This document shows, piece after piece, positions 4,821-42,166 of a stretch of DNA of 64,000 nt; position 1 is the stretch's first letter, and each line of letters begins with the position of its first letter. Both the position numbers and the translations under genes were made by a program. The notes below the pieces were generated by a model. The model did no database searches, was not told the origin of the DNA, and saw only the letters and a list, made by a program, of their open reading frames with translations. The stretch spans positions 124,001-188,000 of the IMG/VR virus record IMGVR_UViG_3300003877_000001; one strand, written 5' to 3'.

Positions 4821-7800
4821 ATGGAAGAAACTTTAGAAGAACAACCTAAAGAGGGTAAAGTATATTCTAAATATACAAGAGATGAAATTCACGAAGCCAC
4901 ATTAGCCTATTTTAATGGCGATAATTTAGCAACAGAAGTTTGGATAAACAAATACTGTTTAAAAGATTCAGATGGTAATCTTTACGAAAAAACTCCTGAT
5001 GATATGCATTGGAGATTAGCAAAAGAATTAGCAAGAATAGAAAAGAAATATACAAACCCTTTATTCGCTGAAGAAATATACGAAAAAATCAAACATTTTA
5101 AGAAAATAGTTCCACAAGGTTCACCAATGTCAGGCATTGGAAATGATTTTCAAATTGTATCCATCTCAAATTGTTTTGTAATTGGTAATGAAAATGAAGC
5201 AGATTCATATGGTGGTATTTTTAAATTAGATCAGGAAATTGCACAACTACAAAAAAGAAGAGCAGGTGTTGGTGTAGATTTATCTTTTATAAGACCTGAA
5301 GGTTCACCTGTAAAAAATTCTGCATTAACATCAACAGGTATCGTTCCATTTATGGAAAGGTTCTCAAATACAACAAGAGAAGTTGCACAAGATGGTAGAC
5401 GTGGTGCTTTAATGGAATCTATTTCAATTAAACACCCAGATGCTGAAGCATTTATTGATGCCAAATTAGATGGTACTAAAGTAACAGGTGCAAATGTATC
5501 GGTTAAAATTGATGATGATTTTATGGAAGCTGCTACACAAGGCACAACCTATACACAACAATATCCAATAAATTCTAATAATCCAACATTTACTAAAGAA
5601 GTTAATGCATCTAAAATATGGAAAAAAATTATCCATAATGCATGGGATAAGGCAGAACCGGGTATTTTATATTGGGATACTTTAATTAATGAATCTGTTC
5701 CTGATTGTTATAGTGATTTAGGTTTTAAAACAATATCAACAAACCCTTGTCTTACTTTAGATTCGAACATAATGACAGATAAAGGTAATAAAACTGTTGA
5801 AGAATTGATTGGTGTTAAATTCATCGCAATGGTCGATGGTGGTTTTTATTCATCGACAGATAAAGGTTTTTTTATAACAGGTGAAAATAGAGATGTTTTT
5901 CAAATAACTACAAAAAAAGGATTTAAAATAAAGTCAACAGATAATCATGAATTTAAACAAGTACTTGAAATAAATAGAAATGATAAGAAATATAAATGGA
6001 CTGAATTAAAAAACTTTCAAATTGGTGATACTATTAATCTTAACAACAATATTGGGATGAATTGGAATGGAGAAGGAAATTTTGAAGAAGGTTGGTTAAT
6101 TGGAAGTTTATTAGGTGATGGAACATTCGATAATGAATCCGCAATTTTAAGATATTGGGGTGAAGATAGAAAAGAAACTAAAAATTATGCTATTGAATGT
6201 ATAAAAAATAATTTAAAATATAGATTGGATTTGGGTAACTCTAAAGATGATTTAGAAATCGAACAAGTTAAAAGTGTTAATTTAAAAAAATTATCATACG
6301 AATATGGTGTTTTAAATGATAAAAGAATTAACAATAAAATAGAAAAAGCAAGTAGTAAGTTTTATAAGGGATTCTTATGTGGGTGGTTTGATGCTGATGG
6401 AACTGTAAATAATAATATTGAAAAGGGTGTTAACGTTAGACTAGCATCATCAATTTTGGAAAATTTATATGTGGCACAAAGAATGTTATCTAAAATTGGT
6501 ATTATCTCAACCGTTTATGAAAATAGAAGAGAAGAACAATATAAAAAAATGCCCGATGGTAATGGTGGGTATAAAATGTATAAAACAAAGTCACAACATG
6601 AGTTATCAATATCTAAGGATAATCTATTAATCTTCCAAGAGGAAATAAATTTTATTGAAAATAGTAAAAAAAATAAATTAAAAAATGCTTTAAATAATTT
6701 AGATAGGGGGTTATATAGAGAAAGATTTGTTGATACTATTAAATCTATTGAATATGTTGGTGTTGAGAATGTTTATGATTGTCAAATCCCCGATAAAAAT
6801 GAATTTGATGCAAATGGGATTAGTACACATAATTGTGGTGAAATTCCTTTATGTGCAAATGATAGTTGTAGATTATTAGCTATTAATTTATTTGGTTACG
6901 TTGTAAATCCATTTACTGATAATGCTTTTTTTGATTGGGAATCTTTTAAAATAGATGTTAGAATTGCTGAAAAATTAATGGATGATATTATTGATCTTGA
7001 ATTAGAAAAAATAGATAAAATATTAGCTAAAATAGATTCCGATCCAGAAGATTTACACATTAGAGAAACCGAAAGAAATCTTTGGGTTAGTATTAAAGAT
7101 AAAGCAGAAAGAGGTCGTAGAACAGGATTAGGTATTACAGCAGAAGGTGATATGTTAGCTGCATTAGGTTTAACATATGGTACTGACGAAGCTAATAAAT
7201 TTTCAGAAGAAGTACATAAACAATTAAAACTTGAAGCATATCGTTCATCAGTATATATGGCAAGAGATAGAGGTGCTTTCCCAATGTATGATACTGAAAG
7301 AGAATTAAATAATCCATTTATTCAACGTATAAAAGACGAAGACTCTGATCTATATGATATGATGGTAATGTATGGTAGACGTAATCTAGCACTACTTACA
7401 ATAGCACCTACGGGTACAGTATCTATTATGACTCAAACTACATCAGGTATTGAACCTGTGTTCTTAGTTTATTATACTAGAAGAAGAAAAATAAATCCAA
7501 ATGATAAAAACGTTAGAGTTGATTTTACCGATGAATTAGGTGATACTTGGATGGAATATCCAGTATTTCATCATAATTTTGTTACTTGGTTAGAAGTTAA
7601 TGGTTACGATGTTGAAGATATTATTGAACACTATACTTCAGATCAAATTAACGAATTAGTTAAACTTTCACCATATTACGGTGCAACATCTAATGATGTT
7701 GATTGGGTTAAAAAAGTAGAAATGCAAGGAATGGTTCAAAAACATATTGATCATTCAATATCAGTTACTGTAAATCTCCCTAATGATGTAACTGAAGAAA

Positions 7801-8483
7801 CAGTTGCTAATGTATATGAAGCTGGTTGGAAACATGGATGTAAAGGAATTACTGTTTATCGTGATGGTTCACGTTCTGGTGTTTTAGTTACTGAAACAGA
7901 AAAGAAAAAGAAAGAAAAAGATAAGTTATTTAAAGATAATCATGCACCTAAAAGACCTAAAAGATTAAAAGCTGAAATTATAAGATTTCAAAATAATCTT
8001 GAAAAATGGATTGGTGTTGTTGGTATGATGGATGGAAGACCATATGAAGTTTTTACTGGTCGTATGCAAAATGGTTTATCTGAATTACCTACAAGTCTTA
8101 TTGAATGTGAAGTTGTTAAAGTAAGAGATGAAAATGGTATTAAAAGATATGATATTGAATATGTTGATTCTAATGGTGAAAAAGCTGTACATACAGGATT
8201 AAATCATACATTCAATGAAGAATATTGGAACTATGCTAAAATGATTAGTTCAGTATTACGTCATGGTATGCCAATAATCTATGTATTAGATTTAATACAA
8301 TCACTTAACTTAAATGATGAACATTTAAATACTTGGAAGAATGGTGTAGCTAGAGTAATAAAAAAATACATCAATGATGGTGAAAAGGGAAATGGTACAT
8401 GTCCAAATTGTGGGTCAGATAATTTAGAATATAAAGAAGGTTGCCTTACATGTGTATCATGTGGTAATAGTAAATGTGGATAA
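4821..8483 (+). CDS. nrdJ: class II (adenosylcobalamin-dependent) ribonucleotide reductase with intein
   Basis: SNCFV, TNP[intein]CGE, IAPTGT, KGITVYRDGSR; C-terminal CPxCG...EGC..C..CG. Confidence 0.9.
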   Translation: MEETLEEQPKEGKVYSKYTRDEIHEATLAYFNGDNLATEVWINKYCLKDSDGNLYEKTPDDMHWRLAKELARIEKKYTNPLFAEEIYEKIKHFKKIVPQGSPMSGIGNDFQIVSISNCFVIGNENEADSYGGIFKLDQEIAQLQKRRAGVGVDLSFIRPEGSPVKNSALTSTGIVPFMERFSNTTREVAQDGRRGALMESISIKHPDAEAFIDAKLDGTKVTGANVSVKIDDDFMEAATQGTTYTQQYPINSNNPTFTKEVNASKIWKKIIHNAWDKAEPGILYWDTLINESVPDCYSDLGFKTISTNPCLTLDSNIMTDKGNKTVEELIGVKFIAMVDGGFYSSTDKGFFITGENRDVFQITTKKGFKIKSTDNHEFKQVLEINRNDKKYKWTELKNFQIGDTINLNNNIGMNWNGEGNFEEGWLIGSLLGDGTFDNESAILRYWGEDRKETKNYAIECIKNNLKYRLDLGNSKDDLEIEQVKSVNLKKLSYEYGVLNDKRINNKIEKASSKFYKGFLCGWFDADGTVNNNIEKGVNVRLASSILENLYVAQRMLSKIGIISTVYENRREEQYKKMPDGNGGYKMYKTKSQHELSISKDNLLIFQEEINFIENSKKNKLKNALNNLDRGLYRERFVDTIKSIEYVGVENVYDCQIPDKNEFDANGISTHNCGEIPLCANDSCRLLAINLFGYVVNPFTDNAFFDWESFKIDVRIAEKLMDDIIDLELEKIDKILAKIDSDPEDLHIRETERNLWVSIKDKAERGRRTGLGITAEGDMLAALGLTYGTDEANKFSEEVHKQLKLEAYRSSVYMARDRGAFPMYDTERELNNPFIQRIKDEDSDLYDMMVMYGRRNLALLTIAPTGTVSIMTQTTSGIEPVFLVYYTRRRKINPNDKNVRVDFTDELGDTWMEYPVFHHNFVTWLEVNGYDVEDIIEHYTSDQINELVKLSPYYGATSNDVDWVKKVEMQGMVQKHIDHSISVTVNLPNDVTEETVANVYEAGWKHGCKGITVYRDGSRSGVLVTETEKKKKEKDKLFKDNHAPKRPKRLKAEIIRFQNNLEKWIGVVGMMDGRPYEVFTGRMQNGLSELPTSLIECEVVKVRDENGIKRYDIEYVDSNGEKAVHTGLNHTFNEEYWNYAKMISSVLRHGMPIIYVLDLIQSLNLNDEHLNTWKNGVARVIKKYINDGEKGNGTCPNCGSDNLEYKEGCLTCVSCGNSKCG
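5748..6833 (+). mobile_element. intein (362 aa) with LAGLIDADG endonuclease in nrdJ
   Basis: Begins CLTLDS after NP and ends THN before the catalytic C; motifs LIGSLLGDG and FLCGWFDADG. Confidence 0.92.
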
Positions 8484-14397: not shown

Positions 14398-14836
14398 TGA
14401 ATTAATTGATTATTATAAAAATAAATATGATGGTGAATTAATTATAAAATCAATTGAATACAAAACAGTATATATTAATGGAAATCATATTAAAAAATTA
14501 GAACATGTCTATGAAATTTATGTTCTTTTAGATTTATTAACCCCAAATGCAAATTCTTGGAATATTCCGAATTTTTTTAAAAGTAAAGTTTCTTTTGAAA
14601 ATGCAATTAAAATGTTTAAAGTTGCTGTAAATGGATATTTAGAAGCCTTATTAATTGAAAAAGAGTTTGTAGAAATAAGTTCAGAGAAAAGACTTTTAGT
14701 TGATTTATTATCAAAAGATATTAATTCTTTAAACGAAGAAGATTTTGATTTCATGATTTCACATTATCTAAAAATAGAAGAATATTTGAAAGTTCAAAAA
14801 TATGAAAATTTAAAAAAAAAATATTATGAAAAATAA
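14372..14836 (+). CDS. hypothetical protein
   Basis: 154-aa ORF overlapping the next start. Confidence 0.6.
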   Translation: MKNYEELTIELIDYYKNKYDGELIIKSIEYKTVYINGNHIKKLEHVYEIYVLLDLLTPNANSWNIPNFFKSKVSFENAIKMFKVAVNGYLEALLIEKEFVEISSEKRLLVDLLSKDINSLNEEDFDFMISHYLKIEEYLKVQKYENLKKKYYEK

Positions 14837-15734
14837 AAAAATAATTCTTCTCTGTGGAATCCCTGCTAGTGGAAAATCTACATGGGCAAATAAATTTATA
14901 TTAAATAATTCTAATTATGTTAGAATTAATAGAGATATGTATCGTTTAATGCTTGATGGTTCTCAAATAATGGATTTTAAGGGAGAAAAGTTAGTAACTG
15001 AATTAGTTAATAATGCAATTGTTTTGGCTACAAAGTCTAAGTATAACGTACTTGTTGACCAAACTAATGTTAACTTAAAGTACTTGAATGAAATGGTTGC
15101 ATTTTGTGAAAAAATTGCAGATGTTGAGTTTAAAATATTCGATATAACAGAAAAAGTCGCCATCGAAAGAGACTCAAATAGAGATGCTAAAGTAGGTGCA
15201 AAAGTAATCAAAAAAATGTACAAAAACTACTTAAATCTATTCTCTTCTAATTTCGATTTCTCAACAAGAAAAAGAAAACCACATATTGCTACCAACATCA
15301 AGTGGGAGCGTGATGGTACTTTACCAGATGCAGTGATTTTTGACATTGATAGTACTATAGCACATACTCAAGGTAAAAGAGGGATATTTGATTGGGATAA
15401 AGTTAATCTTGATATTGTAGATGAAATTGTTCTTGAAACAATTAAATCATATAAGGACTATGGTTATAAGATTATCTTTGTTACGGGTAGAGATGGTGTT
15501 TCACGAAAAATGACAGAAGATTGGTTAATACATAATAAAATACCTTTTGATATGTTATTCACTAAACCTAAAAATGATTTCAGAAAAGATATTATAAATA
15601 AAACAGAAATTTATCATAATTTCATTAAACCAAATTATAATGTATTAGCAGTTTATGATGACCGTAATTCTGTTTGTAAAATGTGGAGAAATTTAGGAGT
15701 AAAATGCTACCAAGTTCAAGAGGGTGATTTTTAA
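14826..15734 (+). CDS. pseT: polynucleotide 5'-kinase/3'-phosphatase
   Basis: P-loop GIPASGKST and RINRD; HAD FDIDST, VTGR, YDDR. Confidence 0.9.
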   Translation: MKNKKIILLCGIPASGKSTWANKFILNNSNYVRINRDMYRLMLDGSQIMDFKGEKLVTELVNNAIVLATKSKYNVLVDQTNVNLKYLNEMVAFCEKIADVEFKIFDITEKVAIERDSNRDAKVGAKVIKKMYKNYLNLFSSNFDFSTRKRKPHIATNIKWERDGTLPDAVIFDIDSTIAHTQGKRGIFDWDKVNLDIVDEIVLETIKSYKDYGYKIIFVTGRDGVSRKMTEDWLIHNKIPFDMLFTKPKNDFRKDIINKTEIYHNFIKPNYNVLAVYDDRNSVCKMWRNLGVKCYQVQEGDF

Positions 15735-18743: not shown

Positions 18744-19940
18744 ATGAATTATCAAAATATACAATATAAACCATCTACATTGAATGCAATAATAAATGCA
18801 TTCAATGCTAAAAATTTACGTAATTGGAATGTATTATATTTTTACTTTGATATACACCAAACAATATTATATCCTGACTATAATAATGAAGAAGAATTAA
18901 AATTCTATCCATACATAAAAGAAATATTACAACATCTAAGTAAACAAAATGATATTGTACTTGGAATTTATACGTGTTCATATCCTGATCAAATAAAAAA
19001 ATATTTTAAATTTTTTGAAAAAAATAATATTAATTTTAAATATGTAAATAAAAATCCAGAAGCAATGAATACAAAATATGGGTATTATGTAGATAAACCA
19101 TATTTTAATGTCCTTTTTGACGATAAATGCGGTCTAAATGCTGAGATTGATTGGTATTTCATTGCAGAATATTTTGGTTTAATTAATAATTCTAAAAATG
19201 ATTATTATGTGTATGTATATCTCGATCCAAGAAAAAGTGGCTTTTATAATTCAGAAAGTTTCATTTTCCCAAACGAACCCTTTTATGTTGGTAAGGGTAA
19301 AAATAATAGACATTTTGACCATTTAAAAGAATCCGAACTGAACAAAGAAAACGGTAATATTATAAAACAAAGAAAAATAAAAAAAATATTATCATTAAAT
19401 AAAACTCCTATAATATATAAAATATTTGATAATGTTAACGAAAATTTTGCATACCATGTTGAAAATTTATTAATCCTAGATATTGGTAGAGTTAATAATA
19501 AAACAGGTGTTTTAACTAATCTAAATGACGGTGGATATGGTAACAAAAATTGTGCAATAACCAATAAAACAAAAGAAAAAATTTCTAAGTCGTTAAAAAA
19601 TTATCATATAAATAATCCTATTAGTGACGAAACTAAACAAAAAATTGGTGATGCTAATAGAGGTAGAAAATATTCTAAGGAATATATTAAACATCTTAAA
19701 GAAATAAGAAAAGGAACAAAAATTACCCATAGAAAAAAATATTATTTAATATCACCAACAAATGTTAAACATTCTTTTATAGGTAAAGATAGATTAATTG
19801 AATTTGTTAAAAAGGAAAATTTATCATATATAATTTTAATGAAAAAAATAAACAGTGGAAAAATTTTAAATTCCGATATTTTAAGAAAAACTCAACAAAC
19901 ATTAAATTCAATTGGGTGGGAAATAATAAAATCAAAATAA
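18744..19940 (+). CDS. HAD-like domain fused to GIY-YIG-like/NUMOD3 endonuclease
   Basis: N-terminal FDIHQTI..KPYFNVLFDDK; then YYVYVYLDPR..FYVGKG..R, LTNL.DGG, ETKQKIG. Confidence 0.7.
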   Translation: MNYQNIQYKPSTLNAIINAFNAKNLRNWNVLYFYFDIHQTILYPDYNNEEELKFYPYIKEILQHLSKQNDIVLGIYTCSYPDQIKKYFKFFEKNNINFKYVNKNPEAMNTKYGYYVDKPYFNVLFDDKCGLNAEIDWYFIAEYFGLINNSKNDYYVYVYLDPRKSGFYNSESFIFPNEPFYVGKGKNNRHFDHLKESELNKENGNIIKQRKIKKILSLNKTPIIYKIFDNVNENFAYHVENLLILDIGRVNNKTGVLTNLNDGGYGNKNCAITNKTKEKISKSLKNYHINNPISDETKQKIGDANRGRKYSKEYIKHLKEIRKGTKITHRKKYYLISPTNVKHSFIGKDRLIEFVKKENLSYIILMKKINSGKILNSDILRKTQQTLNSIGWEIIKSK

Positions 19941-23061: not shown

Positions 23062-23146
23062 GCCGATTTCGCATAGTGATCGATTGCACTGGTCTTGTAA
23101 ACCAGTAGGTTTATACCTCACGTCAGTTTGAATCTGACAATCGGCT
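23062..23146 (+). tRNA. tRNA-Thr(TGT) with long variable arm
   Basis: GCCGATT/AATCGGC; CTGGT-ctTGTaa-ACCAG; V-arm AGG-tttata-CCT. Confidence 0.82.
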
Positions 23147-23174
23147 CAAAAAATTGACTCAATGAGTCAAATAT

Positions 23175-33716: not shown

Positions 33717-33786
33717 GTTGCCATAGGTTGGTGTAAAATATTAGTCTCTAAAACTAATAACGAGAGTTCGAATCTCTCTGGCAGCA
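33717..33786 (+). tRNA. amber-suppressor tRNA (anticodon CTA)
   Basis: GTTGCCA/TGGCAGC-A; TTAGT-ctCTAaa-ACTAA; GAGAG-ttcgaat-CTCTC; weak D-arm. Confidence 0.78.
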
Positions 33787-34251
33787 CTTAAATATTAAAA
33801 ATATGAAAGATAATGTAGAATATAAAATAGTTTCTAGTGATTCAACTGATTTCATGGGAAATAGAGTAAGTAAATTAATGTCAGAGGGTTGGGTATTATA
33901 TGGAAGTCCATATTTTAATAGTCAAAAAGAATCTAATTGTCAAGCAATGGTTAGACACCCAAAAACTAAAGAAATTTTAAACGATTAACATGTCAAAAGT
34001 ATATGTTGATTTAAGAGTAGAAGCATTTGAAGAAGATTTAAATGATTTTCTAACATTATTAGGAAAAATTAATTATACAGGACGTATTGGTGCAAGCAGA
34101 AGCATTAAAGTAAATATTGATGGTGATGGTTCTGGTTATATTGGTGTTAAAAGACTAAGTGATAAAAAACCAATACATGAATGGGTAAATTTAGATGAAA
34201 AACAATTAAAAAAAGTGTCTGACGGTGAAGACTTTGACGACCATTATATAG

Positions 34252-39873: not shown

Positions 39874-40620
39874 AACATTATGAACAATTTAGAAAATTTA
39901 ATAGAAGAAATACATGAACAATTAAATACTATTAATTATAATGCTGATTTAGGTGATGTTGGTAATGAAATTGGTATTGTAATTGCTAAATATTTTGATG
40001 AAGATGATATGGGTTTTGATAAAGAATCTTTTTTATCGGGTTTAAATCATGGAATATCATTAACTGATGGAACTCATGGATAATAGTATTTATATAAAAC
40101 AAACATAAACAATGGCAAGAAACGAAGACACACCAGAAAACAATGATGATTTAATGGAAAAACTTTTAGATAAAGTAAATAAAATGGAATTAGAAATTGC
40201 TGAATTAAAAAAACAATTAGCTGATGCTCAACCATTTTATAATCCACCACCATTACCTTTTAATGATTTTGATAGATGTATTGATGATAATGGTCATGAA
40301 TATCCAAATCCTTGGCATTCAATATTACCACCTCATTGTAAAAAATGTGGTAAACAAGCACCAGATTATGGTATAACATTTACAACTAATACTAGTGATG
40401 TACCTTGGGATTTTAATAAACATGGTGGTAATGTAATGAATAATCAAAATCCTATTATAACACATAATAGTACCACATCAAATTCAAAATATATTTCAGA
40501 TACATCTGGTATATTTTAATTATCTATACTAACTTTGTAACAAATTTAGAGAATATTACGTATGAATATTACAGAAGAAGGAGAAGACATGGGTAAAATG
40601 TTAGACCATAAAATAAAAAA

Positions 40621-40866
40621 TGATGAACAAACCAGAGGAAATGTCGCTCTGAAAGGAGAGGAACTTCGAGACACCACTGCCAACGGCAGGAGATTAGATT
40701 TTTGGGATCAACCCATTAAATCTAATCGTTAGTACTGCCAAGGGTGCAAGGTAAACAGACTTAGTGGGCAAGCAGCACTATGATAGTTGGGTTACTGCCA
40801 ATAGACAAATGACATTAATGTTTTAAAAACATAACAGAATTTCGGGTACGCTCAGTTTGTTCATTT
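40621..40866 (+). ncRNA. rnpB: compact RNase P RNA
   Basis: P1 ATGAACAAAC/GTTTGTTCAT; P2 AATGTC/GACATT; GAGGAACTTCGAGA and AACAGAATTTCGGGTAC (P4); GCAAG; AGACAAATGA. Confidence 0.75.
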
Positions 40867-42166
40867 TAAATATTATAATTATGAAAGAAATTATAGAAAG
40901 AGAAGTAGTTGAAGCCACATGTGATATTTGTGGTGAAGATTGTATGAAGGATTTGTTTACACCAAATGAAACTTTAAGTGAAGATGTAAAGGAATTTGAA
41001 GGTATGGAATTAAAAGCAGTTTGGGGGTATGCATCTAATAAAGATGGTGAAGTTTGGGATGCTGTTATTTGTGAAAAATGTGTTGATAAACATTTAGCAC
41101 CGTTAATTAAATTCCTAAAAAGTCCATATTTATAAGTTTTTTGAAAATTATTCCGTATTTAAAACTGTAAATAGAATAAATATGGAATTAACAGACTTAT
41201 ATAATTTAATGAAAGAAGAAGTATGTGACAGTATCGTTGGATATATATCATACGAAGGAATTGCAATAAAGTGGGAATATGATAGTTTTAATAATGAATT
41301 TGATGATAATGAAAGTGAATTAGAACATTTACATAGAATATTTGAAGAGGATTTAGAAACAATAGAAGAATTGGTTAATATTGAAAATTGTCATATTAGT
41401 GACCCAACAATAGAAGACACATATATATCATTTTATATTGAACAATAGTGCTTAAAACAGAAGATTTATATACTTATTTAGATAATAAAAAAATACTTAG
41501 TGTTTATCATCGTGATAAAATAATTGATGATATATTAAAACTCCAAGAATTATTACATCCTATGGGTATTATAAAAGATGATGTTGATGTACATGTATTA
41601 AAAGATAGATCACTAGTAATGGTATTAATATGGCAACATGAACTATTCGCAATAAAACATTTTCAAGAAAACAGTAAACAACCACCAACATTTTTAATAG
41701 ATATTTTGTAACATTTAATGGTAATTTAACGTATATTTAAATATGAAAAATGATTATACATACACAGGATTTATTTGTAGTGATAATAAAGGAAAATTTG
41801 TTCTTACTACCAGAAACGATAAACAATTTAATTTTAGTGGTATTGATGGTAATGATTCATTGAAAGATGTTGAATTGGGTGAAAGTGAAGCTATGTTGGT
41901 TTGTGTTAAGTTTTTCGATGGTACTGAATCTATGACAATGGAATATGCACATGAAACAAATTATGAAGAAATAGTTTTTGCTATTGAAAATCATGGGATT
42001 ATTGTAAATGATTACGAAGAATCAATATATGATATGGTTTATAAAAACTACGAAAACTTAGATTTCTTTTGGGGTTTAGTTGAAGAATTTTATGAATCAG
42101 AAGAAGGTATTATATCATTTAATGAGTTTAAAATAAAAAAACATTGGAAAAATAAATAATAAAATT

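What the first reader, a model, noticed from the sequence alone, without database searches (positions are those of the whole stretch)
40536..40866. Phage-encoded minimal RNase P RNA
Seen: about 245-nt non-coding unit behind its own promoter motif, with P1, P2, a short P3, a P4 pseudoknot with compensatory changes (GAACTTCGAGA / TTTCGGGTAC) and the conserved GAGGAA, GCAAG, AGACAAATG and AACAGAA blocks. It is far shorter than typical bacterial rnpB, so most of the specificity domain seems absent. Inference: a ribozyme with relaxed T-loop/elbow recognition that matures the atypical phage tRNAs, probably using host RnpA.
Basis: partly seen in the sequence, partly recalled or inferred. Interest (0 to 1): 0.82.

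Follow-up and report, generated by a model that had tools for sequence, protein, structure and literature searches.

The report
Phage-encoded minimal RNase P ribozyme gene
A very large bacteriophage carries its own stripped-down copy of the RNase P ribozyme, the RNA enzyme that trims transfer RNAs; it keeps the bacterial catalytic half, has lost the substrate-recognition half, and I found no earlier report of a virus encoding this RNA.

Summary
Window 40622-40865 (+) is a 244-nt structured RNA gene in a 326-kb phage contig. It has the catalytic (C) domain of bacterial type A RNase P RNA: P1, a 7-bp P2, P3, the P4 pseudoknot with the bulged U, P5, the P6 pseudoknot, P15-P17 with the GGU loop, and the GAGGAA, GCAAG, UAGAnAAAUGA and ACAGAA blocks. 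A 36-nt hairpin replaces the specificity domain and P18 is absent.

Rfam misses the window copy (best 9.6 bits, E 0.81). I found about 40 homologues in other huge-phage contigs. Some match the class A model full-length at 38-40 bits (E about 1e-9 to 1e-11). On 30 distinct sequences, 94.5% of cells pair against 35-43% in controls, and 28 pairs change on both sides.

In relatives the gene lies inside the phage tRNA cluster. The phage's own tRNA genes carry A(-2)U(-1) leaders and an encoded C74, which fits this enzyme.

Most likely it is the catalytic subunit that matures phage tRNAs. The partner protein (host RnpA?) and the activity are untested, and the claim that the phage tRNAs are "atypical" is not supported.

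It is a new variant of a known kind. No prior description turned up in the searchable literature.

The parts
40534..40567 (+). Recurrent bipartite promoter-like motif (TTTGTAAC-N16-ACGTAT...), upstream of the RNA
   Evidence: TTTGTAAC-N15-17-CGTA occurs 6 times in the window, all on the + strand and in intergenic positions, against 0.03 expected. It is conserved in the close relative L029. The same motif follows the RNA in other loci. It is not a sigma-70 match. Promoter function is inferred.
40568..40621 (+). Presumed 5' leader, which overlaps the start of a spurious 56-aa ORF (40562-40732)
   Evidence: The differences between the window and L029 here are mostly non-synonymous in the ORF frame. 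The ORF has no Pfam match. More distant relatives have indels across it.
40622..40865 (+). The RNA gene: minimal RNase P RNA, 244 nt
40622..40639 (+). P1 5' strand (40622-32) plus the conserved CAGAGGA. The GAGG of that block pairs with C(G)CUC at 40849-53 (inner P1)
   Evidence: Every member has a complementary P1 of 8-21 bp whose sequence varies. In one search, 9 of the 15 P1 pairs change on both sides. The inner pairing follows the RF00010 alignment.
40640..40646 (+). P2 5' strand (AAUGUCG), pairs with 40810-40816
   Evidence: A 7-bp helix that occurs in 6 sequence versions, all complementary. L029 shows two compensatory pairs.
40647..40658 (+). P3: 4-bp hairpin with a GAAA tetraloop
   Evidence: A hairpin of 12-57 nt occupies this site in all members. 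In L029 U.G becomes U-A.
40658..40671 (+). CR-I: GAGGAA plus the P4 5' strand, with bulged U40666 (equivalent to E. coli U69)
   Evidence: 12 of 18 bases match E. coli 61-78 without gaps, and the P4 pairs fall in the E. coli register. P4 is 99.6% paired, with 4 of 8 pairs compensatory. Nine sequence versions are seen.
40672..40675 (+). P5 5' strand (CACC), pairs with 40743-40746
   Evidence: Invariant in the 30 sequences. The megaphage copy L081 has CUAC/GUAG instead.
40677..40680 (+). P6 pseudoknot 5' strand (CUGC), pairs with 40772-40775 in the P17 loop
   Evidence: 100% paired. Other versions are UUGCU/AGCAA, UUGCA/UGCAA (L023) and GAACC/GGUUC (L081).
40685..40689 (+). P7-like helix 5' strand (GGCAG), pairs with 40735-40739. 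It closes the S-domain site
   Evidence: The first pair occurs as G-C, C-G or U-A and the fourth as A-U or G-C (helix 8). L081 has CGUGG/CCACG.
40692..40727 (+). 36-nt hairpin at the position of the specificity domain
   Evidence: This site holds 13 to 97 nt across members, always closed by GA/UC. The RF00010 model skips the whole S-domain when aligning members.
40746..40750 (+). J5/15 GCAAG. A40748 is equivalent to E. coli A248
   Evidence: 8 of 10 bases match E. coli 243-252. The block is invariant in the family.
40750..40796 (+). P15 (40750-54/40792-96), P16 (40759-61/40785-87) and P17 (40763-66/40776-79). The L15 3' strand GGGU is 40789-92 (equivalent to E. coli G291-U294)
   Evidence: P15, P16 and P17 each have 2 pairs with changes on both sides. 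GGGU is invariant and aligns to the CGGGU of RF00010. The fifth P15 pair (A40754-U40792) never co-varies, so it is uncertain.
40797..40816 (+). J15/2 (the UAGACAAAUGA block; there is no P18) and the P2 3' strand
   Evidence: 11 of 15 bases match E. coli 327-341. P18 goes from 24 model positions to 0 in the RF00010 alignment.
40817..40833 (+). Small optional hairpin in J2/4 (P19-like position)
   Evidence: Absent in L029 and most members. L058 and L061 carry other hairpins at the same site.
40834..40865 (+). CR-V ACAGAA (40834-39), P4 3' strand (40840-47), UACGCUCA, and P1 3' strand (40855-65)
   Evidence: ACAGAA matches E. coli 347-352 at 6 of 6.

Best explanation
Window 40622-40865 (+) is a functional gene for a minimal RNase P RNA carried by a huge AT-rich phage (326-kb contig).

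Shown: it descends from the catalytic domain of bacterial type A RNase P RNA and keeps every catalytic-core element. These are P1-P2-P3, the P4 pseudoknot with the bulged U flanked by GAGGAA and ACAGAA, P5, the P6 pseudoknot, J5/15 GCAAG, and P15-P17 with the GGU loop. The specificity domain is reduced to a 36-nt hairpin and P18 is gone.

Inferred: after transcription from a phage promoter-like motif and removal of a ~50-nt leader, the RNA folds and binds a small basic protein cofactor, most simply the host's RnpA, whose contacts lie in the C-domain. It then cleaves the 5' leaders of the phage's many pre-tRNAs. Substrate positioning would rely on acceptor-stem and leader contacts: U(-1) with the J5/15 adenosine, and discriminator plus C74 with the GGU of L15. 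It would not rely on the T-loop/D-loop elbow. This gives the phage processing capacity for its own tRNAs, including the amber suppressor, that does not depend on the host ribozyme.
For: Homology:
- The window matches RF00373 full-length, weakly (9.6 bits, E 0.81).
- Family members match RF00010 over model positions 1-367 at 38.6-40.4 bits. E is 1e-9 to 5e-9 and 2e-11.
- Those members are linked to the window RNA by nhmmer at E 1e-18 to 1.7e-20.
- Blocks match E. coli rnpB without gaps: 12/18, 8/10, 11/15 and 6/6. P4 is isosteric, with the bulged U at the U69 position.

Selection for structure:
- On 30 distinct sequences, 94.5% of cells pair against 35-43% in slid controls, and 28 pairs change on both sides against 2-8. 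None of 500 shuffles reaches the observed covariation score.
- Per-helix complementarity holds in every full-length member.
- A distant copy in the 635-kb phage LR745206.1 changes whole helices (P5, P6, P7) and keeps the pairing.

Context:
- 26 tRNA genes lie in the window.
- In relatives the RNA sits between tRNA-Gly(GCC) and tRNA-Ser(GCT) on the tRNA strand. In L023 it ends 3 nt before tRNA-Ser.
- The phage tRNA genes have U(-1) in 19 of 25, A(-2) in 21 of 25 and C74 in 25 of 25, with C at 10.9% overall.

Feasibility:
- The E. coli C-domain alone is catalytic. It needs a P6-type interaction and does not need P18 (PMC5839562). The phage RNA keeps P6 and lacks P18, which is exactly that combination.
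- Archaeal type T RNase P shows that natural loss of the S-domain is viable (PMC3579882).
Against: - No activity data exist.
- The window copy on its own is not significant against any Rfam RNase P model, and no member reaches a gathering score.
- No RnpA-like gene was found in the window or beside the RNA in relatives, so the holoenzyme is undefined.
- No sigma-70 promoter on the RNA's strand and no intrinsic terminator flank the gene, and the RNA ends are unknown.
- The host already has RNase P, so the benefit to the phage is inferred.
- In the window the gene lies 7 kb from the nearest tRNA rather than inside the cluster.
- Some members read ACAAAA instead of ACAGAA.
Confidence: 0.72

Rival explanations
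1. It is an RNase P-derived ribozyme that has been retargeted. The conserved C-domain cleaves something other than ordinary pre-tRNA 5' leaders. Candidates are spacers and small RNAs in the phage tRNA operon, phage mRNAs with tRNA-like or hairpin-RCCA-like sites, or host RNAs.
For: Loss of the S-domain removes the elbow 'ruler' and should broaden or change substrate choice; C-domain constructs cleave model hairpins (PMC5839562). The S-site is a hot spot that accepts unrelated inserts of 13-97 nt. One of these is a module that also exists as a free-standing RNA between tRNA genes in cultured phages.
Against: The features kept are those used for pre-tRNA: the L15 GGU, the J5/15 adenosines and the 7-bp P2. 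The phage tRNA flanks (U-1, C74) match them. Placement inside tRNA clusters is explained most simply by tRNA maturation.
Confidence: 0.12
2. It is a non-catalytic decoy. The RNA binds and titrates host RnpA, or competes with host RNase P RNA, to reprogramme or shut down host tRNA maturation.
For: No phage RnpA gene is seen. The C-domain is where the bacterial protein binds (established structural knowledge, not tested here). The missing S-domain would lower catalytic efficiency.
Against: A decoy would not need the bulged U in P4, ACAGAA, the J5/15 adenosines, the P6 pseudoknot or the CCA-binding GGU. All of these are conserved or co-vary across about 40 sequences. Sequestering RnpA would also hurt maturation of the phage's own 26+ tRNAs.
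Confidence: 0.07
3. It is a decaying fragment of a host rnpB gene picked up by the phage (a pseudogene), or the region codes for the 56-aa ORF at 40562-40732.
For: The RNA is truncated relative to bacterial rnpB and falls below the Rfam thresholds. An ORF with an upstream purine-rich stretch overlaps it.
Against: Compensatory substitutions in every helix across 30+ distinct phage contigs show purifying selection on RNA structure. The ORF is not conserved, with indels in P3 and the S-site in relatives and non-synonymous changes in L029, and it has no Pfam match. The pattern scan found no copy in 185,579 bacterial and archaeal genomes; its 5 hits were chance matches in GC-rich coding DNA.
Confidence: 0.02

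Closest known systems
Bacterial RNase P RNA, class A (Rfam RF00010; E. coli M1 RNA / rnpB)
   Same: C-domain architecture and order of elements: P1, 7-bp P2, P3, P4 pseudoknot with the bulged U at the U69 position, P5, P6 pseudoknot with the P17 loop, and P15-P16-P17 with GGU in L15. The conserved blocks GAGGAA, GCAAG, UAGAnnAAUGA and ACAGAA are present.
   Different: It is 244 nt against 377 nt. The whole S-domain (P8-P14, CR-II/III) is replaced by a hairpin and P18 is missing. It is AT-rich and encoded by a phage. It scores 0-40 bits against a gathering score of 100.
[quoted passage not shown]
   Same: [quoted passage not shown] It was likewise invisible to the pre-existing covariance model; RF00373 gave 'not detected' to 10.2 bits on type T, and the window scores 9.6 bits.
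   Different: Type T has an archaeal C-domain with a 3-bp P2, a contracted P5/P15 linker, 61-78% GC and archaeal protein partners. The phage RNA has a bacterial 7-bp P2, P6/P16/P17, the L15 GGU and about 40% GC. The two are an independent, convergent reduction. No RF02357 match was reported.
Engineered C-domain-only ('CP') E. coli RNase P RNA (Mao et al. 2018, PMC5839562; Kikovska et al. 2012)
   Same: C-domain without the S-domain. Activity depends on a P6-type pairing and P18 is dispensable. The natural phage RNA keeps P6 and has dropped P18.
   Different: Those are laboratory deletions with reduced efficiency. The phage RNA is a natural, evolving family with its own peripheral elements: variable P3, the S-site hairpin and the J2/4 hairpin.
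Reduced RNase P RNAs of CPR bacteria (Lui et al. 2021, PMC8172020)
   Same: Diverged bacterial RNase P RNAs that are found only below the Rfam thresholds and lack P12, P13, P14 and P18.
   Different: The CPR RNAs are cellular and, as described, lose only individual S-domain helices (P12, P13, P14) and P18. Some lose the L15 UGG/GGU motif, which the phage RNA retains.

Membership tests
Bacterial RNase P RNA class A (RF00010) | P4 long-range pseudoknot with a single bulged U, flanked by CR-I (GAGGAAAG) and CR-V (ACAGAA) | tested here: met
   The window P4 is 8 bp plus bulged U40666, in the E. coli register. It is 99.6% paired, with 4 of 8 pairs compensatory.
Bacterial RNase P RNA class A (RF00010) | P1-P2-P3 with a 7-bp P2 (the bacterial length) | tested here: met
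   The 7 bp in bacteria against 6 in archaea and 3 in type T comes from PMC3579882.
Bacterial RNase P RNA class A (RF00010) | P15-P16-P17 with the GGU of L15 and a P6 pseudoknot to the P17 loop | tested here: met
   GGGU at 40789-92 is invariant. P15, P16, P17 and P6 co-vary.
Bacterial RNase P RNA class A (RF00010) | Specificity domain (P7-P14 with CR-II/CR-III, T-loop recognition) | tested here: not met
   Only a P7-like helix and a 36-nt hairpin (40685-40739) are present. The CM skips the S-domain in all members.
Bacterial RNase P RNA class A (RF00010) | P18 | tested here: not met
   24 model positions are aligned to 0 nt. The window has 13 nt between P15 and P2.
Bacterial RNase P RNA class A (RF00010) | Score at or above the Rfam gathering threshold (100 bits) | tested here: not met
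   The window has no hit. The best relatives score 38.6-40.4 bits, significant by E-value but below threshold.
Bacterial RNase P RNA class A (RF00010) | Endonucleolytic removal of pre-tRNA 5' leaders; association with RnpA | not testable with these tools
   There is no assay. No RnpA gene is found in the window.
Archaeal RNase P RNA (RF00373) / type T (RF02357) | Archaeal C-domain signature (short P2, contracted P5/P15 linker) and a score above the gathering threshold | tested here: not met
   RF00373 gives 9.6 bits for the window and 16.6-30.7 bits for relatives, against a gathering score of 84. No RF02357 hit was reported. P2 is 7 bp.
Protein-coding gene (56-aa ORF 40562-40732) | Conserved reading frame, synonymous-biased substitution, or a family match | tested here: not met

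The most novel reading that the evidence does not exclude
Huge phages carry a self-sufficient, modular tRNA-processing ribozyme. It consists of a bacterial-type catalytic core with a 'socket' at the S-domain position that accepts interchangeable RNA modules.

One such module is a ~95-nt pseudoknotted RNA. It also exists as a free-standing, unannotated small RNA between tRNA genes in many cultured phages (T4-like, T5-like, RaK2-like, Erwinia, Cellulophaga). It could be a portable substrate-recognition element that binds tRNA, acting in cis in some phages and in trans in others.

The window's copy would then be the fully stripped form, working without any specificity module. If so, these phages would be the first viruses known to encode this ribozyme, and an unexplained class of phage tRNA-operon small RNAs would gain a testable function.
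Probability: 0.2. Interest if true: 0.92.

Novelty: new variant of a known kind. Interest (0 to 1): 0.8.

Why it matters
RNase P RNA is regarded as a hallmark of cellular life. Seven full-text searches, and a search of the text of the main huge-phage survey, turned up no report of a virus-encoded copy.

- **Translation genes in huge phages.** A phage-borne copy would extend the known set of translation-related genes in these phages from tRNAs, tmRNA and factors to a ribozyme.
- **A natural minimal enzyme.** It supplies a bacterial-type counterpart to archaeal type T and to engineered C-domain constructs. That makes the question of how much RNase P RNA is enough, and what the S-domain and P18 really contribute, testable on about 40 natural sequences of graded size.
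- **A detection gap.** Current covariance models miss this family.
- **Biology.** It points to phage control over maturation of its own tRNAs, including the amber suppressor used for stop-codon recoding.

Tried and rejected
- **Rfam at curated thresholds** on the whole window returned only tRNAs. A permissive scan of 801 nt returned only noise.
- **blastn and megablast of the window** against 50,697 deposited phage records found nothing.
- **The first DNA pattern** hit only the window's own contig.
- **The genome-contig scan** gave 5 hits, all chance matches in GC-rich coding DNA. About 15 of the metagenome hits were likewise chance.
- **An RnpA partner** was not found. There is no RNR motif, no Ribonuclease_P Pfam hit among 53 ORFs of 85-165 aa and none among genes next to the RNA in relatives. 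Those neighbours have no homologue in the window.
- **A sigma-70 promoter or intrinsic terminator**: no promoter on the RNA's strand and no terminator were found.
- **The idea that the ~95-nt module equals T4 rnaC or rnaD** was rejected. They do not align convincingly.
- **A canonical S-domain identity for the module** is not supported. RF00010 does not align it and it has no Rfam hit on its own. A faint resemblance (GUGAAA, CAAACC) is only an impression.
- **The 56-aa ORF** was rejected.
Full report
**1. What is at the coordinates**

The stretch 40536-40866 lies between two small + strand ORFs (40112-40519 and 40884-41135) in an AT-rich genome. GC rises from about 25% to 46% over 40650-40799. 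The RNA folds better than all 200 dinucleotide shuffles, with z = -3.0.

The window belongs to IMG/VR contig IMGVR_UViG_3300003877_000001, which is 325,854 bp. Its genes are those of a large lytic phage:
- an intein-containing ribonucleotide reductase;
- NAMPT and an NMNAT-NUDIX protein;
- a T4-type polynucleotide kinase/phosphatase;
- a GIY-YIG homing endonuclease, a thioredoxin, PTH2 and YqeY.

The window also has 26 tRNA genes, including a CUA suppressor.

**2.

Rfam at gathering thresholds finds only tRNAs. A permissive scan of 801 nt finds nothing relevant. Restricted to 261 nt, the best E-value of all 4,227 families is archaeal RNase P (RF00373), at 9.6 bits and E 0.81 against a gathering score of 84. 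It aligns end to end and places P2, P3, GAGGAA, P5, GCAAG, P15, the UAGAnAAAUGA block and ACAGAA in order. On its own this is suggestive and not significant.

**3. Homologues**

No deposited phage matches the window by blastn. I then used two routes:
- the neighbouring dATP/dGTP-diphosphohydrolase-NT5C gene as an anchor, followed by nhmmer;
- DNA patterns built from conserved blocks.

Together these gave about 40 distinct homologous sequences from other large viral and metagenomic contigs. Two of the records are activated-sludge assemblies. The five hits in 185,579 bacterial and archaeal genomes were chance matches in GC-rich coding DNA. A more distant copy lies in the 634,780-bp uncultured phage LR745206.1, at about L081 1402-1637 (nhmmer E 8e-8).

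**4. Homology to RNase P is statistically established through the family**

| Members | Rfam model | Score | E-value |
|---|---|---|---|
| L052, L025, L061 (large insert) | RF00010, positions 1-367 | 38.6-40.4 bits | 1e-9 to 5e-9 |
| L025 alone | RF00010 | 40.2 bits | 2e-11 |
| Six shorter members | RF00373 | 16.6-30.7 bits | 1.6e-5 to 0.39 |

The three RF00010-matching loci are linked to the window RNA at nhmmer E 1e-18 to 1.7e-20. The RF00010 alignment covers P1, P2, P3, CR-I, P5, GCAAG, P15/16, CGGGU, UAGAUAAAUGA and AACAGAA. It skips the entire S-domain and P18.

**5. Structure and covariation**

A script found the following in every full-length member:
- a complementary P1 of 8-21 bp with variable sequence;
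- the conserved CAGAGGA, which per the RF00010 alignment forms the inner part of P1 with C(G)CUC;
- a 7-bp P2 in five sequence versions, with a sixth in L081;
- a P3 hairpin of 12-57 nt.

P4 occurs in nine versions. AAC...GGGU and AAG...GGCU are strictly correlated.

I wrote the full structure, including the P4 and P6 pseudoknots, onto an alignment of 30 distinct sequences (A3). The counts are:

| Measure | Proposed structure | Slid-partner controls |
|---|---|---|
| Cells forming a standard pair | 94.5% | 35-43% |
| Pairs with changes on both sides | 28 | 2-8 |
| Covariation score | 0.218 | 0.03-0.05 |

None of 500 shuffles reaches the observed value on four of the five measures. The per-helix results are:

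| Helix | Cells paired | Pairs changed on both sides |
|---|---|---|
| P4 | 99.6% | 4 of 8 |
| P7-like | 96% | 2 of 5 |
| P15 | 98% | 2 |
| P16 | 100% | 2 |
| P17 | 91.7% | 2 |
| P6 | 100% | 1 |

The close relative L029 has the same gene order. Its differences inside the RNA are mostly structure-preserving: a double compensatory change in P2, U.G to U-A in P3, and G.U to A-U in P1. L081 changes whole helices and keeps the pairing: P5 CUAC/GUAG, P6 GAACC/GGUUC and P7 CGUGG/CCACG.

The 5' part of the L007 group is misaligned in A3, so the counts are conservative. A covariance model could not be calibrated within the tool's time limit.

**6. Mapping to the textbook enzyme**

I used E. coli rnpB fetched from the annotated genome. 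Ungapped block identities are:

| Block | E. coli | Window | Identity |
|---|---|---|---|
| CR-I / P4 5' strand | 61-78 | 40658-75 | 12/18 |
| J5/15 | 243-252 | 40743-52 | 8/10 |
| J18/2 and P2 3' strand | 327-341 | 40802-16 | 11/15 |
| ACAGAA | 347-352 | 40834-39 | 6/6 |

In the E. coli register:
- P4 is A40663-U40847, C40664-G40846, U40665.G40845, bulged U40666 (= U69), then C40667-G40844 through A40671-U40840.
- A40748 corresponds to A248.
- G40790, G40791 and U40792 correspond to G292, G293 and U294.

The roles of these E. coli residues are established knowledge and were not tested here: metal binding around U69, the contact of A248 with N(-1), and pairing of G292/G293/U294 with the RCCA 3' end.

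**7. What is missing**

The S-domain position is closed by a P7-like helix with a conserved GA/GUUAGUA internal loop. It holds only a 36-nt hairpin (40692-40727). Across the family this site holds 13, 21, 35-36, 40-46, 54, 78 or 94-97 nt. P18 is absent. The window has an extra small hairpin in J2/4 (40817-40833) that L029 lacks.

So the RNA is a C-domain-only bacterial-type RNase P RNA. It meets the C-domain criteria of class A. It fails the S-domain, P18 and gathering-score criteria. I therefore do not file it as a canonical class A member and treat it as a new reduced variant derived from that class.

**8. Context bearing on function**

In relatives the gene sits in the tRNA cluster on the tRNA strand. 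The conserved order is tRNA-Arg(s) - tRNA-Gly(GCC) - RNA - (1-3 genes) - tRNA-Ser(GCU) - suppressor tRNA(CUA). In L023 the RNA ends 3 nt before tRNA-Ser, which implies co-transcription and release by tRNA-processing cuts.

In the window the gene has moved about 7 kb beyond the suppressor tRNA. There it follows a recurrent bipartite motif, TTTGTAAC-N16-ACGTAT. The core pattern (TTTGTAAC-N15-17-CGTA) occurs 6 times, all on the + strand, against 0.03 expected. With its TTTG and TAnnTTTG-like halves it resembles the Bacteroidota -33/-7 promoter type. That is my recollection of the consensus and an inference, not a test.

All 25 normal tRNA genes of the window encode C immediately after the discriminator, followed by A or T. 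So there is no CCA, but C74 is 25/25 where C makes up 10.9% of bases. U(-1) occurs in 19/25 and A(-2) in 21/25. These are the flank features that a bacterial-type RNase P RNA reads through J5/15 and L15. That fits the retention of those elements and a recognition mode centred on the acceptor end.

**9. Mechanism**

Shown: the RNA is a conserved, structurally constrained homologue of the RNase P catalytic domain, it is encoded by huge phages, and it is associated with their tRNA genes.

Inferred: it is the catalytic subunit of an RNase P that matures phage pre-tRNAs without elbow recognition, with a protein cofactor that is most simply host RnpA.

The inference is feasible on published experimental evidence. 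The E. coli C-domain alone cleaves substrates, depends on a P6-type pairing and does not need P18 (PMC5839562). Archaeal type T enzymes live without most of the S-domain (PMC3579882).

No RnpA-like gene was found in the window or beside the RNA in relatives. About 260 kb of the genome was not examined.

The rival readings are a retargeted ribozyme, an RnpA decoy, and a pseudogene or ORF. They are weighed in the dedicated fields. The conservation of catalytic and substrate-contact residues argues against a decoy or a pseudogene.

**10. Novelty**

Seven full-text searches found no description of a virus-encoded RNase P RNA. A term search of the huge-phage survey, which lists tRNAs and tmRNAs, found no mention of RNase P. 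The nearest published cases are the diverged CPR RNase P RNAs (PMC8172020) and type T. The library does not cover subscription journals, so prior description cannot be excluded.

**11. Side finding**

The 94-97-nt module that many relatives carry at the S-site is absent from the window. It has its own covarying fold, with 8 compensatory pairs. By eye it also has a pseudoknot, GUGGAC/GUCCAC crossing AAGGUUA/UAACCUU.

At about 76-87% identity it matches unannotated DNA in dozens of deposited phage genomes (36 and 49 records in the two searches). There it is a free-standing ~80-95-nt element on the tRNA strand:
- between tRNA-Met and tRNA-Arg in the T4-like phage mogra;
- between tRNA-Glu and tRNA-Ile in the T5-like Proteus phage Stubb;
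- right after an unannotated tRNA-Gly in Klebsiella jumbo phage RaK2.

It has no Rfam match and does not align with T4 rnaC or rnaD. The same RNA appears both free in tRNA operons and in cis at the specificity-domain socket of a phage RNase P RNA. That suggests a tRNA-related or RNase P-related role, which remains unexplained.

Noticed in passing
L027:4707-4802, L016:240-334 and other members; L079 (RaK2) ~1493-1583; L083 (mogra) 1501-1580; L084 (Stubb) 1501-1578; L080 (Nekkels_1) ~1495-1570: A ~80-95-nt pseudoknotted RNA element is inserted at the S-domain site of many family members. It also occurs free-standing and unannotated between tRNA genes in dozens of deposited phage genomes (36 and 49 records in two searches): T4-like, T5-like, RaK2-like, Erwinia and Cellulophaga. 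It has no Rfam match and is not alignable to T4 rnaC or rnaD. Its function is unknown.
   Followed up: partly
window, the 25 normal tRNA genes between 1354 and 33787: Every tRNA gene encodes C at position 74 followed by A/T (no CCA): 25/25 where C is 10.9% of bases. Leaders are A(-2) in 21/25 and U(-1) in 19/25.
   Followed up: partly
window 33717-33787; also L003, L007, L021, L024, L028, L035, L047, L053-L055: A suppressor tRNA with anticodon CUA is conserved in the window and its relatives, and L035 has two copies.
   Followed up: no
window 1073, 3354, 25281, 31033, 40534, 41705 (+ strand): A bipartite motif TTTGTAAC-N15-17-CGTA(T) lies a few nt upstream of start codons. It is likely the phage's promoter and resembles the Bacteroidota -33/-7 type, which hints at a Bacteroidota host and very short 5' UTRs.
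   Followed up: partly
L007:1765-1830 (and the identical L008-L010, L012-L015): Directly after the RNA's P1 there is a second, orphan copy of the 3' end of an L016-type RNA (AAAAUUCUGGGUACGCUCACGUUAUUUUU). It looks like a scar left when one RNase P RNA variant replaced another by recombination.
   Followed up: no
window 23062-23147 and 2399-2482; L003 513-597; L016 4924-5010; L022 6189-6378: ARAGORN calls tRNA-Thr(UGU/CGU) and tRNA-Lys(UUU) genes of 84-87 nt, a length that fits a long extra arm. That would be unusual for these specificities. The identities were not verified.
   Followed up: no
window 4821-8483: The ribonucleotide reductase large subunit is interrupted by an intein with a LAGLIDADG homing endonuclease domain. 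A GIY-YIG/NUMOD3 homing endonuclease lies at 18744-19940.
   Followed up: no
window 14826-15734; L035 4617-4973: The window encodes a T4-type polynucleotide kinase/phosphatase (tRNA repair). Relatives encode a ribosomal protein L7/L12-like protein between the RNase P RNA and tRNA-Ser. The window also has PTH2-like and YqeY-like ORFs.
   Followed up: no
L081 ~1402-1637 (LR745206.1 ~502058-502293): An unannotated, more divergent ~215-235-nt member of the same minimal RNase P RNA family lies in a deposited 635-kb megaphage genome. It has an 18-nt UUCG hairpin at the S-site.
   Followed up: partly
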